Positions 57,076 to 62,533 of a stretch of 64,000 bases of DNA are shown piece by piece. Positions within the stretch are counted from its first letter, which is position 1. Each line of letters starts with the position of its first letter. Below the pieces are notes generated by a model, which worked only from the letters and a program-made list of their open reading frames with translations, was not told the origin of the DNA and did not search any database. The stretch lies in sequence record MZ475891.1, one strand, 5' to 3'. The position numbers were made by a program, and so were the translations under genes.

Positions 57076-57573
57076 TCAATCAGGTTTATCCAGAATACGC
57101 TCCAACTCACATTTGAGAAATTCTTCGTGCTCTTGGTCATGACCTGCTTCGAAGTAAATATCAAAATGGTTGTCGTAGTTTTTCAGTGTAATAGAAATTA
57201 AAGGGTGGCCGCTCGGTAGATGCGATCTCAGATAGTACGCTACGATAAAAACATCGTAGGTCTTTAGCTTCCGTGGAGCCGCCGCCTGCTCCAACATCTT
57301 TGCATAGAGCGCTTCGTACTTCTCTTGGTACTTCTTCTTTTTATTAAAGAAATCCAAGAGATTAGCCACAACATGCCGCTTTTTCATATAGATAGAAGCC
57401 CCGATAAGATTCTCGGCGGCGCTCACGAACTTCAAATCAGACATATCGGGCTTTAGTTTAATAAATTTTGCGTAATCATATTGGTCACGCAGGACAACCT
57501 CCATCTTTGCAGCTATACGCAAAATACGGTCGACGTTGGGTTGCTTCACTCTAGGCATAATAGAACTCAACAA
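57076..57573 (-). CDS. hypothetical protein, paralog of 57592..58116
   Basis: Shared motifs L..HLPS.HP and L..ELERI. Confidence 0.6.
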   Translation of the reverse strand: MLSSIMPRVKQPNVDRILRIAAKMEVVLRDQYDYAKFIKLKPDMSDLKFVSAAENLIGASIYMKKRHVVANLLDFFNKKKKYQEKYEALYAKMLEQAAAPRKLKTYDVFIVAYYLRSHLPSGHPLISITLKNYDNHFDIYFEAGHDQEHEEFLKCELERILDKPD

Positions 57574-57591: not shown

Positions 57592-58116
57592 TCAATCGGC
57601 AGTAGACCCAATGCGCTCTAGTTCGTAGGTCAAGTAAGCATCCCACGAATAGAAGCCATCTTTAGCCAACACAGAATCAAACTGGCGGCTGATCTTCGTA
57701 CCTTTAGGAAAGCGAATGCGATCAGACAGACGTTGAAGTCTGGCGTAGGTCATCTCAACTTTCTTCACAATTGGGTGTGTGCTTGGTAAATGATTCTGCA
57801 GGAACTTGCAGCTAAAGATCAGCGGGAAGTCTTTGAGGAGTTCCACCGATTCTTTTTGCGCAGCCACCAGCCCACTATAGTCATTCACCTGCTCATGGAT
57901 TTCAGGATGAGCATAGTACCAATCGTCGAGAGACTCTAACCCAAGACGTTCTTCGTACATCATTGACTCGTACATTACCATCAGTACGGGCTTCTCTTCC
58001 TTCTTATCCTTGAAAGCAACAAACAGTTTGGGATAAGTTCCAAACTTCTTTTCCATAAAGACTTCGAGGATTATCGCATAACGAAGAATCTCAAATTCGG
58101 TTAGTACCTTGCTCAT
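57592..58116 (-). CDS. hypothetical protein, paralog of 57076..57573
   Basis: FLQNHLPSTHP and YLTYELERI. Confidence 0.6.
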   Translation of the reverse strand: MSKVLTEFEILRYAIILEVFMEKKFGTYPKLFVAFKDKKEEKPVLMVMYESMMYEERLGLESLDDWYYAHPEIHEQVNDYSGLVAAQKESVELLKDFPLIFSCKFLQNHLPSTHPIVKKVEMTYARLQRLSDRIRFPKGTKISRQFDSVLAKDGFYSWDAYLTYELERIGSTAD

Positions 58117-58119
58117 ACC

Positions 58120-59724
58120 TTACTCCGAAATATCTTTGTCACAAAACTTTTTAGCAATGAACGTGGCATCGGTACTTTCAATGCTGTCGCCCTCAACACA
58201 AAGTAAAGCACCATCGTGCTCAAGAGAATAAACGCCTTTGATATTCGGGCAATTGAGAATCGCATCGAACAGGTACTTACTCTCCCAGCCGGCAAGCATG
58301 TGGTTTAGCACTCGGCGCCTTATCTTCTTATCACTTTCGCCTTCTTCTGGATCATAGTTAGAACCAGTGGCGCAAGTCAACACGCCATACTCAGGACGCT
58401 TTGACTTTTTGTTTTTCCGAAACTGCTTTGCGTACTCATTAAGCAAATCTCGTATTGAGAAATAGAGCAACGATGTTCTGGTGTTCCAGTCCTCCATAGC
58501 AGTACGAACTTTATATTTCGGCATCGTCTTACGGAGTTCTTTGTAGACGTTGCTGTACGGGTTGATCTCCAATTGACCAGCGGAGAAGATGGTTGCATAC
58601 AAACAAATCTTTGCCGTCTTCTTATCCATCTGAGATATACGAGCCATGTCCTCCACAGACTTAATATCGTCGAAGAATCCGTAGTCAATCGAATACGAGG
58701 CCAACTCGTTTCGTAACACGTTGAACTGGCTGGACTTCATGTCCCAGTTAGTACCTACAGTAAAGCAGGCTTGTTTAAGAATGCTCGGCAAGTTTTGAAA
58801 ACCACCGCCGATTTCAAACAAGCGACCACCAATCTGAGACAGTCGGTATCGAGGCCAGTAGCGAATAGTTAACGGGTTAGTGTTAGCAATCTGCACAGGT
58901 CCAGAAACGATTGTGTCCAAGAGAGCTTTAACCTGCAAATATTGTTTCTTTGCTTTGTTGTTAGCAATCAAGGACTTCTCTTCAAGGTACTCAAGTATCG
59001 GTTCGATGTTAACCTCATTAGGCAGCATCTTATCCAACACTTTGCGATACAGTAGCCTGCCCGTTAAACCTTTTCCGCGGTCCCTGTTTCTATCAAGGGA
59101 CTTGAGATCGTGCTGAGGTCTAACAAAAGGCAGCTTAGAATTTTTCTCTATCATGGACCACACAGTCACACCATAGTCTTCTCGCAATATGCGCACAGGA
59201 CTATAGAAACGGACACGCTTTAGAATCTCCTGAGACGTGTGGTGCTTGATATGTTGGTACATCCCGTCAAGAATCTCCTGACGTATGCGGAACTCTCTGC
59301 TAAGGCCCTTTTTCTTATCATAAGGCTTCGTCTCAAAGACGTTAACCATCAACCAGTCCAAGGATCTACTGAAAGTACCTTCTTTTTTAGCATACTTGCC
59401 GACAGCAACGCTATTTCCGCCTCTACGGAAGCCAAATACCATCGGCAGCTCTGTTTGACCTAAAATCTTAGGAAAAGGTACCCATACGCGGCCAAACTTC
59501 TTCTTTTTGTGTTTGCGCGACGGGTACAAGCTGCATTGAAGAATGTGCCAGAAGAAAAGATTCAATTGAGTACGAAACTCACGCTCGGAGTCCGCAGGCC
59601 CCGTATAAGGACATGCGTTTACCACGTTGCTTTTCACCCAAAGAACGACTTCTTTCTCCTGGTAGGAGGGGTTCTTGATCAGAACGGCCCCCTGACCGGA
59701 AACGATTCGTTTTTTCATACTCAC
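58120..59724 (-). CDS. minimal family-A-fold polymerase (TV-Pol-like), no exonuclease domain
   Basis: Ordered motifs GGRL...FQNLPS, NWDMKSSQ (A), KTAKICLYATIF (B), LNHMLAGWE and EHDG (C). Confidence 0.7.
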   Translation of the reverse strand: MSMKKRIVSGQGAVLIKNPSYQEKEVVLWVKSNVVNACPYTGPADSEREFRTQLNLFFWHILQCSLYPSRKHKKKKFGRVWVPFPKILGQTELPMVFGFRRGGNSVAVGKYAKKEGTFSRSLDWLMVNVFETKPYDKKKGLSREFRIRQEILDGMYQHIKHHTSQEILKRVRFYSPVRILREDYGVTVWSMIEKNSKLPFVRPQHDLKSLDRNRDRGKGLTGRLLYRKVLDKMLPNEVNIEPILEYLEEKSLIANNKAKKQYLQVKALLDTIVSGPVQIANTNPLTIRYWPRYRLSQIGGRLFEIGGGFQNLPSILKQACFTVGTNWDMKSSQFNVLRNELASYSIDYGFFDDIKSVEDMARISQMDKKTAKICLYATIFSAGQLEINPYSNVYKELRKTMPKYKVRTAMEDWNTRTSLLYFSIRDLLNEYAKQFRKNKKSKRPEYGVLTCATGSNYDPEEGESDKKIRRRVLNHMLAGWESKYLFDAILNCPNIKGVYSLEHDGALLCVEGDSIESTDATFIAKKFCDKDISE

Positions 59725-59753
59725 ATCGTGATTACCTGAGTTTTTCTATCTGA

Positions 59754-59762
59754 TATTTACAG
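59754..59762 (-). promoter_or_regulatory. motif A upstream of the minimal polymerase
   Basis: AATCTGTAAATA. Confidence 0.55.
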
Positions 59763-59782
59763 ATTCAGACTTATCTTATGAC

Positions 59783-60100
59783 CCGTACGCTACAGCGCTT
59801 GGTACGGCTACAGCTACTACAGCGGAGCTAGCGGGATACGCGCTTGGCTTGCTCGAAACATGGAAGGAGAGGTACATCTTTAGGCGGCACGTTTTGTAGA
59901 GGCTGAATCCGAGAGATTAGCACTATCAATGCCCCTCCACCCATGCTGGAGCTGCTTAGAATAGCATTCTGTTAGGATAATTTAGGTCGTCTAAACCGTG
60001 TAAATTTTCCCGAGAAAACAGACGATTTTCCGTAAAACACGCCCGTTTTCAGACAAAAACCAGAAAAATCTTAATAAAATCAAGGACTTTTCCGAAAACT
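59783..60100. repeat. origin-like non-coding region with short direct repeats and phased A/T tracts
   Basis: CTACAGC three times (59790, 59808, 59817), inverted repeat CCGTAC/GTACGG, and TTTTC..AAAA units at 60005, 60026, 60046 and 60088. Confidence 0.5.
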
Positions 60101-60110
60101 ACTCAGGAAA

Positions 60111-61886: not shown

Positions 61887-61984
61887 ATTAATCTCCTTTG
61901 TTGCTCTGAAATTATTGTGCTGTTTCCGTGCCTTTCACATCAAAAATATTTATTTAGTAGCACAATGAAAATACGGAGTTTCAT

Positions 61985-62533
61985 ATGCGCGTTCTTTCAG
62001 GCGACCCGGGTAAGGTTAACTTCGCGCTGTCTGTCCAGGAGTTCAAGGACAAACGCATTACTGTTATAGGCACTCGCATGTTCCGCAGTCCTATACAGAA
62101 CCTGCATTACGATATGCGTCAGCCCACAAAAGAGTTTCTTGCCGAGCTTGAGCTAATATGGAAACTCTACGGACCGTTCGATGCCATGTGCTTTGAGCGC
62201 TTCCAGTCGCGTGGTCTTGGCGGCAACACCATTGAAGCTATCAGCCTCATGCTCGGTGTCATATCGTTCTTTGCGTTGAAGAAGAAATGCCCCCTTGATT
62301 TAATCACTGCTAGTCAGTGGAAAAATGCTTTCAACCGCAGCATGGACCTTAAAGGCTATTATGCGGAATACAATTTGACGTCAAAGAAAAGCCAAAAAGC
62401 AATTCATGAATTTGATGCGAGTCTCATTGGCGTCTATACCTTCTATCGACATTCAGAAATCAAACCGTTTGCAGGCTTCAATCGTATCATCGATGCGTAT
62501 GTTCCACGATTCCTGGAAGCACCTGTTCTTTGA
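61985..62533 (+). CDS. RuvC-like Holliday junction resolvase
   Basis: VLSGDPG..NFA, CFERF and HEFDAS carry the RNase H-fold acidic residues. Confidence 0.8.
   Translation: MRVLSGDPGKVNFALSVQEFKDKRITVIGTRMFRSPIQNLHYDMRQPTKEFLAELELIWKLYGPFDAMCFERFQSRGLGGNTIEAISLMLGVISFFALKKKCPLDLITASQWKNAFNRSMDLKGYYAEYNLTSKKSQKAIHEFDASLIGVYTFYRHSEIKPFAGFNRIIDAYVPRFLEAPVL

What the first reader, a model, noticed from the sequence alone, without database searches (positions are those of the whole stretch)
58120..59724. Second, stripped-down family-A-fold polymerase beside an origin-like region
Seen: the C-terminal half of this 534-aa ORF aligns by eye with the main polymerase. PRYRLSQIGGRL...FQNLPS matches PTYSYLKVVTGRT...LQQVPS; NWDMKSSQ matches KVDYSAHE (catalytic Asp); KTAKICLYATIF matches RNAVKTVIFGLIY; LNHMLAGWE matches VNSPVQGFG; EHDG matches VHDS. 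There is no exonuclease domain, and the basic N-half may bind DNA. Established: compact polymerases related to PolA and T7 RNAP (TV-Pol family) occur in phages and mobile elements and were proposed to be primase-polymerases. Inference: a dedicated primer or initiator enzyme acting at the adjacent repeat region, or a small RNA polymerase. Its template and product are unknown.
Basis: partly seen in the sequence, partly recalled or inferred. Interest (0 to 1): 0.75.

Follow-up and report, generated by a model that had tools for sequence, protein, structure and literature searches.

The report
Second, minimal TV-Pol polymerase in jumbo phage
This unannotated 534-residue gene of a 264-kb Erwinia jumbo phage encodes a second, stripped-down DNA-polymerase-I-type enzyme of the little-studied TV-Pol family, with an intact active site, no proofreading domain and a strongly basic N-terminal domain of unknown fold; its job beside the phage's normal polymerase and primase is still unknown.

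Summary
The ORF (58120-59724, minus strand, 534 aa) is real and matches a 'hypothetical protein' of Erwinia phage pEa_SNUABM_13 at 99.8% identity. Pairwise BLASTP, Pfam, NCBIfam and HMMER-versus-PDB see nothing. A high-confidence AlphaFold model (pLDDT 91) hits only family-A DNA polymerases at the top of the PDB (E=3e-5). A domain-trimmed profile-profile alignment with Klenow is colinear over 255 columns (P=7e-4, above 81 shuffled or reversed controls). It maps R301/D328/K372/H503-D504 onto R668/D705/K758/H881-D882.

Microcystis phage Ma-LMM01 gp030, the only non-canonical PolA-like ORF in a genome named as a TV-Pol carrier, matches the family profile (E=1e-24; hhalign 98.9%). A distant member sits beside a D5-like helicase.

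Residues 1-218 are basic (pI 10.2), are not an exonuclease, and match no solved fold.

The phage also has a replicative PolA, clamp, clamp loader and a DnaG-type primase, so this enzyme is accessory. Whether it primes, repairs or transcribes is unresolved. The adjacent 386-bp gap is conserved but shows no origin-type repeats or skew switch. It is a new member of a known kind.

The parts
58120..59724 (-). Whole gene: 534-aa TV-Pol-family polymerase (GTG start, stop included)
   Evidence: ORF list. 99.8% identical to pEaSNUABM13_00221. PHROG 30690, 'unknown function', E=1.6e-209. AF2 model pLDDT 91.4, pTM 0.88.
59071..59724 (-). N-terminal basic domain, residues 1-218: mixed alpha/beta, unknown fold, not an exonuclease
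   Evidence: pI 10.2, net charge +23, basic in all 21 close homologs. Separate AF2 model pLDDT 79.5. No PDB fold match: best E=1.5, with only weak MarR/PadR-like ~80-column hits at prob <=0.13. No Pfam match. Colinear but only suggestive match to the N-terminus of Ma-LMM01 gp030 (hhalign P=0.013, 126 columns).
58123..59064 (-). Minimal family-A polymerase domain, residues 221-534 (short bihelical thumb, Arg hairpin, palm, reduced fingers)
   Evidence: Foldseek PDB: the top 33 hits are all family-A DNA polymerases (Klenow 3e-5, Taq, Bst, Pol nu, Pol theta, DpoZ). hhalign versus Klenow/PolA profile P=7.4e-4 over 255 columns. Helices 241-252 and 256-273 form the thumb pair.
58774..58860 (-). Pre-motif A, residues 289-317 (Y..Y..GGRLFE.GGGFQNLP...K): beta-hairpin with R301 (= Klenow R668) and QN.P (= Q677 N678 P680)
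   Evidence: R301 69/70, Q310 69/70 and K317 67/70 conserved. Aligned to TGRLSS..PNLQNIP.
58720..58749 (-). Motif A, residues 326-335 (NWDMKSSQFN): catalytic D328 (= D705), with Q333 at the steric-gate position (= E710)
   Evidence: D328 69/70 and Q333 64/70 conserved. D328 lies at the end of strand 325-329, followed by helix 332-343. hhalign register.
58585..58623 (-). Motif B / O-helix, residues 368-380 (KKTAKICLYATIF): K372 (= K758), Y376 (= F762), F380 (= Y766)
   Evidence: K372 is invariant in 70/70. The family profile's best real PDB sequence hit is T7 DNA polymerase motif B (E=0.7, sub-threshold). hhalign.
58282..58317 (-). Minor-groove-sensing motif, residues 470-481 (RRVLNHMLAGWE): R470 (= R841), N474 (= N845), A478 (= Q849; Q in 38/49 distant members), G479 (= G850)
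58204..58227 (-). Motif C, residues 500-507 (SLEHDGAL): H503-D504 (= H881-D882) at the turn between strands 495-501 and 505-510
   Evidence: H503, D504 and G505 are conserved in all but one of the sequences with a residue there. Strand-turn-strand from DSSP. hhalign.
59725..60110 (-). Conserved upstream non-coding gap with two invariant single-copy blocks (59983-60009 and 59872-59894); whether it is a regulatory leader, a promoter or another cis element is not resolved
   Evidence: 66-73% identical and of similar length in relatives whose protein is ~72% identical. Alignment A7 shows 27-nt and 23-nt invariant blocks, each unique in the window. Block 1 was tested and occurs once per genome. A 330-510 bp gap is kept in 15 of 17 related loci. 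No covariation support for an RNA fold.

Best explanation
The gene encodes a TV-Pol-family enzyme, the minimal form of the family-A (Pol I / T7-type) polymerase. Residues 221-534 form a short two-helix thumb, a beta-hairpin carrying the primer/template-contacting Arg (R301), an RRM-type palm with the two metal-binding Asp (D328, D504), and a reduced fingers domain with the O-helix Lys (K372). There is no 3'-5' or 5'-3' nuclease domain. Residues 1-218 are a strongly basic domain of unknown fold.

Shown: the fold, the family, the conservation of the catalytic set, the lack of a nuclease domain, the basic N-domain, and conserved single-copy placement inside the replication/recombination gene block of one jumbo-phage lineage.

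Inferred: it is an active, template-directed, non-proofreading polymerase that makes DNA rather than RNA. The basic N-domain would supply the nucleic-acid grip that the truncated thumb cannot. The enzyme would serve as an accessory initiating polymerase (primase-polymerase type, as proposed for TV-Pols and shown for CcPol-MP) alongside the phage's replicative PolA, clamp, clamp loader and DnaG-type primase.

My step-wise confidence: TV-Pol-family fold and membership 0.9; catalytically active 0.8; DNA rather than RNA product 0.7; de novo priming or initiation as its role 0.35.
For: Fold: the AF2 model has pLDDT 91.4. The top 33 Foldseek PDB hits are all family-A DNA polymerases, at E down to 3e-5 and prob 1.00. 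In BFVD, helicase-fused proteins of Pyramimonas orientalis virus (3e-7), Zamilon (1e-4) and Catovirus rank among ordinary phage PolAs.

Residues: hhalign versus Klenow gives R301=R668, D328=D705, K372=K758, Y376=F762, F380=Y766, R470=R841, N474=N845, G479=G850 and H503-D504=H881-D882. The score beats 81 controls. These residues are conserved in 64-70 of 70 sequences.

Family: Ma-LMM01 gp030 is the only non-canonical PolA-like ORF in a genome that Iyer et al. 2008 (PMC2579912) name as carrying a TV-Pol element, and it sits next to a transposase pair. It matches the family polymerase profile at E=1e-24 and hhalign 98.9%. It is not seen by the PolA profile. With the close clade alone the match is E=9e-5 and hhalign 83%.

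Context of distant members: P0059 lies directly after a D5_N/DUF5906/Pox_D5 helicase, and P0045 lies near a resolvase.

DNA over RNA: the family profile versus Klenow gives P=0.002, T7 DNAP 0.002 and T7 RNAP 0.62. The R..N...QG minor-groove motif is present. The position of T7 RNAP Y639 is Phe. The phage lineage carries a sigma factor.

Context of the target: clamp loader, SbcCD, Holliday-junction resolvase, PolA, clamp and helicase are in the window. Synteny is conserved in SNUABM_13, JA11 and SNUABM_5.

Precedent: CcPol-MP, a protein placed in TV-Pol, is a dNTP primase when paired with an ssDNA-binding partner (PMC7581432).
Against: No activity has been measured for this protein or for any close relative.

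The phage has its own DnaG-type primase (Zn ribbon + Toprim), so a second primase is not obviously needed.

The target locus has no D5-like helicase, resolvase or transposase neighbour within about 9 kb.

The Arg of the RxxxK motif (Klenow R754) is only K/R in 42 of 70 members.

The steric-gate Glu of DNA polymerases is Gln (Q333), so sugar selectivity cannot be read off the sequence.

I could not inspect model coordinates, so juxtaposition of D328 and D504 rests on alignment and secondary-structure position, not on a measured distance.

Canonical statistics are modest: hhalign probability versus PolA is only 26%, and Pfam, NCBIfam and HMMER-versus-PDB give no hit.
Confidence: 0.5

Rival explanations
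1. It is a non-proofreading repair, translesion or recombination-associated DNA polymerase. It would extend 3' ends in D-loops, fill gaps or bypass lesions during recombination-dependent replication of the 264-kb genome, in the way exonuclease-less family-A enzymes such as Pol theta and Pol nu work. It would not start chains de novo.
For: The fold hits include Pol nu and Pol theta. There is no exonuclease. The primer-terminus and minor-groove contacts (R301, R470, N474, G479) are kept. The gene lies among the Holliday-junction resolvase, SbcCD and clamp loader, with RecA and SSB nearby in the JA11 relative. The phage already has a DnaG primase. Chen et al. 2024 proposed repair as one option for the analogous divPolA2 (PMC11348598).
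Against: The family's wider relatives sit in mobile elements next to D5-like helicases, resolvases or transposases. That context argues for element replication, not repair. No lesion-bypass signature can be read from the sequence. A large basic N-domain is not a feature of known family-A repair polymerases.
Confidence: 0.3
2. It is a small single-subunit DNA-dependent RNA polymerase. The basic N-domain would recognise a phage promoter and the enzyme would transcribe a subset of phage genes or make a replication primer transcript.
For: T7 RNAP and mitochondrial RNAPs appear in the Foldseek list at E=3e-3 to 2e-2. The steric-gate Glu is absent (Q333) and motif C is HDG rather than HDE. An RNA polymerase role was raised for the analogous divPolA2 (PMC11348598). 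Iyer et al. suggested an ancestral primase/RNAP capacity for TV-Pols (PMC2579912).
Against: The family profile has no sequence signal to T7 RNAP (P=0.62), against 0.002 for Klenow and T7 DNAP. The residue at the T7 Y639 position is Phe (20/21 in the close clade). Gln is isosteric with the Glu gate. There is no match to the RNAP N-terminal domain or specificity loop. The lineage encodes a sigma factor, implying use of host RNA polymerase (PMC7412058). The phage's own replicative PolA also has HDS at motif C, so HDG is not diagnostic.
Confidence: 0.1
3. It is a domesticated or selfish leftover of a TV-Pol transposon that entered an ancestor of this phage lineage. It would now be dispensable or catalytically irrelevant to the phage.
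For: TV-Pols are typically cargo of mobile elements, and the Ma-LMM01 copy sits beside transposases (PMC2579912). Nothing in the target's immediate neighbourhood has a known functional link to it.
Against: The gene is single-copy and syntenic across phages whose orthologs are only 36-100% identical. Examples are SNUABM_13, Alexandra, JA11, the Yersinia phage fHe-Yen9-02 and 17 IMG/VR loci, nearly all on 250-268 kb genomes. Every catalytic residue is retained. No transposase or resolvase is adjacent.
Confidence: 0.07

Closest known systems
TV-Pol family (Iyer, Abhiman & Aravind 2008, Biol Direct 3:39; PMC2579912)
   Same: It has the minimal family-A core: a bihelical thumb, an Arg hairpin, a two-Asp palm and HTH-like fingers with the O-helix Lys. 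It has no nuclease domain and carries an extra N-terminal globular domain. There is a significant profile match to the Ma-LMM01 member. Distant members lie next to a D5-like helicase, a resolvase or a transposase.
   Different: The target sits as a conserved core-like gene in a 264-kb jumbo phage that has a full replication apparatus of its own. It has no helicase, resolvase or transposase neighbour. The Arg of RxxxK is not conserved. Its N-domain is mixed alpha/beta in the model, whereas the TV-Pol N-domain was predicted all-helical; homology between the two N-domains is only suggestive (P=0.013).
CcPol-MP primase of SCCmec (Bebel et al. 2020, eLife; PMC7581432; Rice 2022 bioRxiv 10.1101/2022.12.02.518924)
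   Same: It is an exonuclease-less family-A polymerase placed in TV-Pol. It is the only biochemically characterised relative. It shows that such an enzyme can prime with dNTPs when given a single-strand-binding module.
   Different: CcPol needs a separate small OB-fold partner (MP) and keeps the E710 and F762 equivalents. The target has Q333 and Y376, has a fused basic N-domain, and has no recognisable SSB-like neighbour; the downstream small genes have no detectable fold assignment.
divPolA2 (Chen et al. 2024, Virol J 21:200; PMC11348598)
   Same: It has the same design and the same situation: a second, diverged PolA in a phage that already has a regular DNA polymerase, with an active-looking palm, no exonuclease, a reduced or missing thumb and a novel N-terminal globular domain. 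It shares the GGR..(.)QNLP...YD block.
   Different: It is not the same family at the sequence level. HMMER finds no match, and hhalign aligns only 43 columns (P=0.004, prob 8%) against a 30-sequence divPolA2 profile. divPolA2 has VFDE at motif C, whereas the target has EHDG.
Canonical family-A DNA polymerases (E. coli Pol I Klenow, Taq, Bst, T7 gp5; Pfam PF00476)
   Same: It has the same fold and active-site architecture, with motifs A, B and C and the R..N...QG motif in the same order.
   Different: There is no Pfam match. It is about 100 residues shorter in the thumb and fingers, has no exonuclease domain, has Gln instead of Glu at the steric gate, and has HDG instead of HDE.
T7-like single-subunit RNA polymerases
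   Same: It shares the ancestral palm and fingers, with weaker Foldseek hits (E=3e-3).
   Different: There is no profile signal (P=0.62). It has no RNAP N-terminal domain, specificity loop or Tyr at the Y639 position, and it is half the size or less.

Membership tests
TV-Pol family | Significant sequence-profile relationship to an acknowledged member | tested here: met
   Ma-LMM01 gp030 versus the family polymerase-domain profile gives hmmsearch E=1.1e-24 and hhalign prob 98.9%, E=1.4e-17, 279 columns. It is the only hit among 158 segments of the whole genome. With the close clade alone: E=9e-5 (next best 0.94) and hhalign 83%, E=8.6e-6. Caveat: that gp030 is the member Iyer et al. meant is inferred. 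It is the only non-canonical PolA-like ORF and it is adjacent to transposases, but this was not confirmed by accession.
TV-Pol family | Thumb reduced to a two-helix antiparallel unit | tested here: met
   Helices 241-252 and 256-273 come directly before the Arg hairpin in the AF2 model. hhalign aligns them with the distal thumb of Klenow. This rests on a predicted structure only.
TV-Pol family | [quoted passage not shown] | tested here: met
   Strands 293-295 and 302-304 carry R301. It is conserved in 69/70 and aligned to Klenow R668.
TV-Pol family | RRM-type palm with two conserved catalytic Asp | tested here: met
   D328 (69/70) and D504 (all but one of the sequences with a residue there) align to D705 and D882. 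The distance between them was not measured because no coordinates were available.
TV-Pol family | Fingers with RxxxK motif and a conserved Asp | tested here: inconclusive
   K372 is conserved in 70/70. Position -4 (368) is K or R in only 42/70. The fingers Asp (D359) is D in 17/21 close members but variable in distant ones.
TV-Pol family | No fused or linked nuclease domain | tested here: met
   There is no exonuclease in Pfam, and the N-domain has no DEDD-like or other fold match. Neighbouring genes are not nucleases, except the divergently transcribed resolvase 2.3 kb away.
TV-Pol family | Genomic association with a D5-like helicase, or with a resolvase, integrase or transposase | tested here: not met
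   None lies within about 9 kb of the target or in the syntenic loci of JA11 and SNUABM_5. The feature is met only by distant members: P0059 next to a D5 helicase, P0045 near a resolvase, and gp030 next to transposases.
Family-A DNA polymerase (Pfam DNA_pol_A, PF00476) | Match to the curated family model | tested here: not met
   There was no Pfam hit at E<=10 for the target, or at E<=0.01 for any of 52 family members.
Family-A DNA polymerase (Pfam DNA_pol_A, PF00476) | Polymerase-domain fold with motifs A, B and C in order | tested here: met
   Foldseek PDB E=3e-5, prob 1.00. Colinear hhalign alignment, P=7.4e-4, above all controls.
Family-A DNA polymerase (Pfam DNA_pol_A, PF00476) | Steric-gate Glu (Klenow E710) excluding ribonucleotides | tested here: not met
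   The aligned residue is Q333, which is Q in 64/70. An alternative register would place N335 there. Neither is Glu.
T7-like single-subunit RNA polymerase | Sequence or fold affinity, Tyr at the Y639 position, promoter-binding N-domain and specificity loop | tested here: not met
   hhalign versus T7 RNAP gives P=0.62. F380 sits at the Y639/Y766 position. The N-domain matches nothing. Foldseek hits to RNAPs are 100-fold weaker than to DNAPs.
PolA-SSB (CcPol-MP type) primase | Adjacent small OB-fold ssDNA-binding partner gene | not tested
   The gene that starts 3 nt after the stop (57592-58116) has no Pfam, PHROG or PDB-sequence match.
divPolA2 | Profile-level sequence relationship to AUR84708 and its relatives | tested here: inconclusive
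   Only the GGR..QNLP..YD block aligns: 43 columns, P=0.004, prob 8%. HMMER finds nothing.

The most novel reading that the evidence does not exclude
The enzyme is an origin-specific, primer-independent initiator polymerase. Its basic N-domain would recognise the single-copy invariant element kept immediately upstream of its own gene (59872-60009), and the minimal family-A core would start the first DNA (or mixed RNA/DNA) chain there. The DnaG primase would be left to do lagging-strand work. That would make TV-Pols sequence-directed replication initiators and would give the first defined origin-plus-initiator pair for this jumbo-phage lineage.
Probability: 0.12. Interest if true: 0.8.

Novelty: new member of a known kind. 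Interest (0 to 1): 0.45.

Why it matters
TV-Pols were defined by computation in 2008 as the likely minimal, ancestral form of the Pol I / T7 polymerase superfamily. Apart from CcPol-MP, none has been characterised biochemically.

Here a TV-Pol turns up as a conserved, syntenic, single-copy gene in a whole lineage of culturable 250-268 kb phages (Erwinia, Dickeya, Yersinia hosts). In every database record seen here it is labelled 'hypothetical protein', or in one case 'putative helicase'. No Pfam, NCBIfam or annotated PHROG model covers it.

That gives three things:
- a correct annotation for dozens of genomes;
- a tractable phage system in which to ask what a second, proofreading-less polymerase does next to a complete replisome;
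- a test case for whether a fused basic domain can substitute for the separate ssDNA-binding partner that turns CcPol into a primase.

Tried and rejected
These attempts led nowhere or gave negative results.
- Pairwise BLASTP of the two polymerases gave nothing significant or in register.
- phmmer and hmmsearch of the protein and of three family profiles against PDB sequences gave no significant hit. The only relevant one was a sub-threshold T7 DNAP motif B match.
- Pfam on the target, on its two halves and on 52 members gave nothing. NCBIfam gave nothing.
- Untrimmed hhalign versus PolA was weak and mis-registered at motif A. Domain trimming was needed.
- I tested membership in divPolA2 and could not support it.
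- 'Missing primase' idea: rejected, because a DnaG-type primase is present.
- N-domain as a degenerate exonuclease or known DNA-binding fold: no support.
- Origin features in 59725-60110: only short two-copy repeats, one weak sigma-70-like site whose -10 is not conserved in relatives, and no skew switch.
- RNA element in that gap: no Rfam hit and a positive (unfavourable) covariation term.
- General phage promoter motif: rejected, since both blocks are unique in the window and block 1 occurs once per genome.
- Search for relatives in 185,579 prokaryotic genomes found only one MAG contig.
- A plasmid search with gp030 gave two weak hits, neither in the taxa of the TV-Pol paper.
- A plasmid search with the target's polymerase domain failed because of my own frame error and was not repeated.
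- A conserved downstream partner was not found. The two small downstream genes are weak paralogs of each other, and the first of them (57592-58116) is not detectably related to the JA11 neighbour.
- The supplement of the TV-Pol paper is not held as text, so the Ma-LMM01 accession could not be checked.
Full report
**What is there.** The window is a stretch of an Erwinia amylovora jumbo phage. The ORF at 58120-59724 (minus strand, 534 aa, GTG start) is 99.8% identical to a 'hypothetical protein' of phage pEa_SNUABM_13 (264.7 kb), with the same boundaries as the GenBank CDS. tblastn finds one copy per genome in 43 phage records of Erwinia, Dickeya and Yersinia, at 23-100% identity. IMG/VR adds 17 loci, nearly all on 250-268 kb genomes. 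PHROGs files it in family 30690, 'unknown function'. Pfam and NCBIfam have no model for it.

**Checking the observation.** Pairwise BLASTP between the two proteins shows nothing. Neither the protein nor family profiles reach any PDB sequence by HMMER; the best real hit is a sub-threshold match of the profile to motif B of T7 DNA polymerase.

In an alignment of 21 close homologs, and in one of 70 sequences that includes 49 distant representatives from a 1.8-billion-protein search, the following are invariant or nearly so:
- R301, Q310 and K317
- N326, D328 and Q333
- K372
- G479 and E481
- H503-D504-G505

I trimmed the family alignment to residues 221-534 and compared it with a PolA profile headed by the Klenow polymerase domain. 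That gives a single colinear 255-column hhalign alignment (P=7.4e-4, score 34.4). Forty column-shuffled, forty block-shuffled and one reversed template all scored lower (maxima 20.4, 26.8 and 17.1). The register is:
- R301 = R668
- K317 = R690
- D328 = D705
- Q333 = E710
- K372 = K758
- Y376 = F762
- F380 = Y766
- R470 = R841
- N474 = N845
- G479 = G850
- H503-D504-G505 = H881-D882-E883

**Structure.** AlphaFold2 on the 70-sequence alignment gives a confident model (mean pLDDT 91.4, pTM 0.88). Foldseek against the PDB returns family-A DNA polymerases as the first 33 hits: Klenow 3e-5, Taq, Bst, Pol nu, Pol theta, the apicoplast polymerase and DpoZ, all at prob 1.00. T7 RNA polymerase and mitochondrial RNA polymerases come about 100-fold weaker.

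In the model, D328 ends strand 325-329 and is followed by a helix. D504 sits in the turn between strands 495-501 and 505-510. These are the classic motif A and motif C positions.

**Which family.** Iyer et al. (PMC2579912) name Microcystis phage Ma-LMM01 as carrying a TV-Pol element. They describe a subset of the family with an extra N-terminal domain, found next to transposases or resolvases.

I fetched the whole Ma-LMM01 genome and scanned all 158 stop-to-stop segments of at least 120 aa. The family profile hits one, gp030 (506 aa, beside the transposase pair gp031/gp032), at E=2e-23. The canonical PolA profile hits only that phage's ordinary polymerase, gp178. hhalign of gp030 against the family gives 98.9% probability (E=1.4e-17, 279 columns), whereas gp030 against PolA gives nothing.

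Using only the 21 close jumbo-phage sequences, gp030 is still the top hit (E=9e-5, next best 0.94; hhalign 83%, E=8.6e-6). gp030 also matches 26 of the 75 collected family members directly.

Context of distant members agrees. P0059 lies directly downstream of a D5_N/DUF5906/Pox_D5 helicase, and P0045 lies near a resolvase and ArdC. In the viral structure library, helicase-fused proteins of Pyramimonas orientalis virus, Zamilon and Catovirus rank with or above ordinary phage PolAs.

I therefore file the protein in the TV-Pol family, with one caveat. That gp030 is the member meant by Iyer et al. is inferred from its uniqueness and context, not from an accession.

**The N-terminal half.** Residues 1-218 are separated from the polymerase domain by a low-confidence linker. 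They have pI 10.2 and net charge +23, and the equivalent region is basic in all 21 close homologs. Modelled alone (pLDDT 79.5), the domain matches no solved fold. The best hits are E=1.5, with only weak ~80-column resemblances to MarR/PadR winged helices at prob <=0.13. It is not a degenerate exonuclease.

It aligns colinearly with the N-terminus of gp030 over 126 columns (FFWH.LQ / F.HTFLCQ, VPFP / VPLP, G.SREFRIR.EILD / GICFRYRIHEHIID). The statistics are only suggestive (P=0.013). Only the nearer relatives share this domain; distant ones have other N-termini.

**Context.** The window carries:
- an SF2 helicase
- a sliding clamp
- the PolA
- SbcD and SbcC
- a clamp loader
- a Holliday-junction resolvase

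A canonical DnaG-type primase (CHC2 zinc ribbon plus Toprim) lies about 6.5 kb upstream of the target, just outside the window. The same gene is annotated in the Dickeya JA phages, where a sigma factor, SSB and RecA are also nearby.

The order is kept in SNUABM_13, JA11 and SNUABM_5: resolvase, then two unknown genes, a long gap, the target, small unknown genes, a peptidase-like gene and the clamp loader. The target has no helicase, resolvase or transposase neighbour. So in this lineage the TV-Pol is an accessory enzyme inside the phage's own replication/recombination block. It is neither the cargo of a visible mobile element nor the only primase.

**DNA or RNA, priming or extending.** The sequence signal favours DNA polymerases. 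The family profile against single sequences gives P=0.002 for Klenow, 0.002 for T7 DNA polymerase and 0.62 for T7 RNA polymerase.

Several residue-level features point the same way:
- The R..N...QG minor-groove motif is present.
- Motif B reads K...Y...F, like T7 DNA polymerase's K...Y...Y.
- The position of T7 RNAP Y639 is Phe.

Against a clean DNA-polymerase reading, the steric-gate Glu is Gln in 64 of 70 members (an alternative register would give Asn). Motif C is HDG, though the phage's own replicative PolA has HDS. CcPol, the only assayed TV-Pol, keeps the Glu and Phe. It uses dNTPs and primes only when bound to a separate ssDNA-binding protein (PMC7581432).

A fused, highly basic domain could play that role here. 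That is the basis for my preferred mechanism, but nothing I could run separates priming from mere extension.

**The adjacent gap.** The region 59725-60110 has no tandem or iteron-like repeats. It holds only short two-copy matches and three GCTGTAG heptamers in 34 bp at 59790-59823. The GC skew shows no turn. The one sigma-70-like site is not conserved at its -10 in relatives.

The gap is nonetheless conserved. It has similar length and 66-73% identity in phages whose protein is ~72% identical. It holds two perfectly invariant blocks at fixed spacing, 59983-60009 and 59872-59894. Both are unique in the window, and block 1, which I tested, occurs once per genome. A 330-510 bp gap precedes the gene in 15 of 17 related loci, but the blocks are not found in the clades with 46% identity or less. 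There is no Rfam match and no covariation support for an RNA fold.

I read it as a gene-specific regulatory leader or other cis element. 'Origin-like' is not supported, and it is not excluded either.

**Comparison with what is known, and novelty.** The closest described analogue in phages is divPolA2 (PMC11348598). It is also a second diverged PolA with a novel N-domain and no exonuclease. However, a 30-sequence divPolA2 profile aligns with this family only over the GGR..QNLP..YD block (P=0.004), so they are separate lineages of similar design.

The TV-Pol family itself has been known since 2008. What is new is its presence as a conserved, unannotated gene of a jumbo-phage lineage with a complete replisome, together with the description of its basic N-domain. 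I rate it a new member of a known kind, of moderate interest.

Noticed in passing
window 59725-60110 (blocks 59983-60009 and 59872-59894): The non-coding gap upstream of the gene is conserved. It holds two perfectly invariant blocks at fixed spacing in the 71-73% identity subgroup. Both are unique in the window, and block 1 occurs once per genome. A 330-510 bp gap is kept across the whole clade. Its function is unknown.
   Followed up: partly
window 59721-59726 (minus strand): An out-of-frame ATG followed at once by TGA (a start-stop mini-ORF) overlaps the GTG start codon. It is conserved in all five phages aligned and may be a translational control element.
   Followed up: no
L001:1383-2489 (pEa_SNUABM_13, about 6.5 kb upstream of the target, just outside the window): This 'hypothetical protein' is a canonical DnaG-type primase, with a CHC2 zinc ribbon plus Toprim.
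   Followed up: yes
L003:20001-21635 (Dickeya phage JA11 gp200): The JA11 ortholog is annotated as 405 aa, but the tblastn match begins 417 nt upstream of the annotated start. BFVD holds 405-aa and 284-aa forms for JA11 and JA13. This points to a missed N-terminus or a frameshift in those records.
   Followed up: no
L002:5025-6692 (Erwinia phage pEa_SNUABM_5): The distant ortholog (23% identity) is annotated 'putative helicase' but has no helicase domain in Pfam. There are only weak HTH-like hits in the fingers region. This is a likely misannotation.
   Followed up: partly
window 57592-58116 and 57076-57573 (minus strand): Two small genes directly downstream are weak tandem paralogs of each other (E=1e-4 over 31 residues). 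The first starts 3 nt after the target's stop codon. Neither has a Pfam or PHROG match, and a PDB-sequence search of the first (57592-58116) found nothing. They could be partner proteins; their folds were not predicted.
   Followed up: partly
L021:22746-24266 (Microcystis phage Ma-LMM01 gp030): This 'hypothetical protein' next to the transposase pair gp031/gp032 is the only TV-Pol-like ORF in that genome. It is separate from the phage's regular split PolA (gp178/gp180).
   Followed up: yes
L004:7642-8001 (metagenomic large phage carrying P0024): A 30%-identical relative in an unrelated large phage (QueC, UvrD-type helicase, Thy1 and AAA ATPase nearby) is also preceded by a ~360-bp gap without a called gene.
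   Followed up: no
window 61918-62057 (minus strand): There is a sub-threshold Rfam match to the eukaryotic snoRNA SNORA13 (31 bits against a gathering score of 53). I treat it as chance.
   Followed up: no
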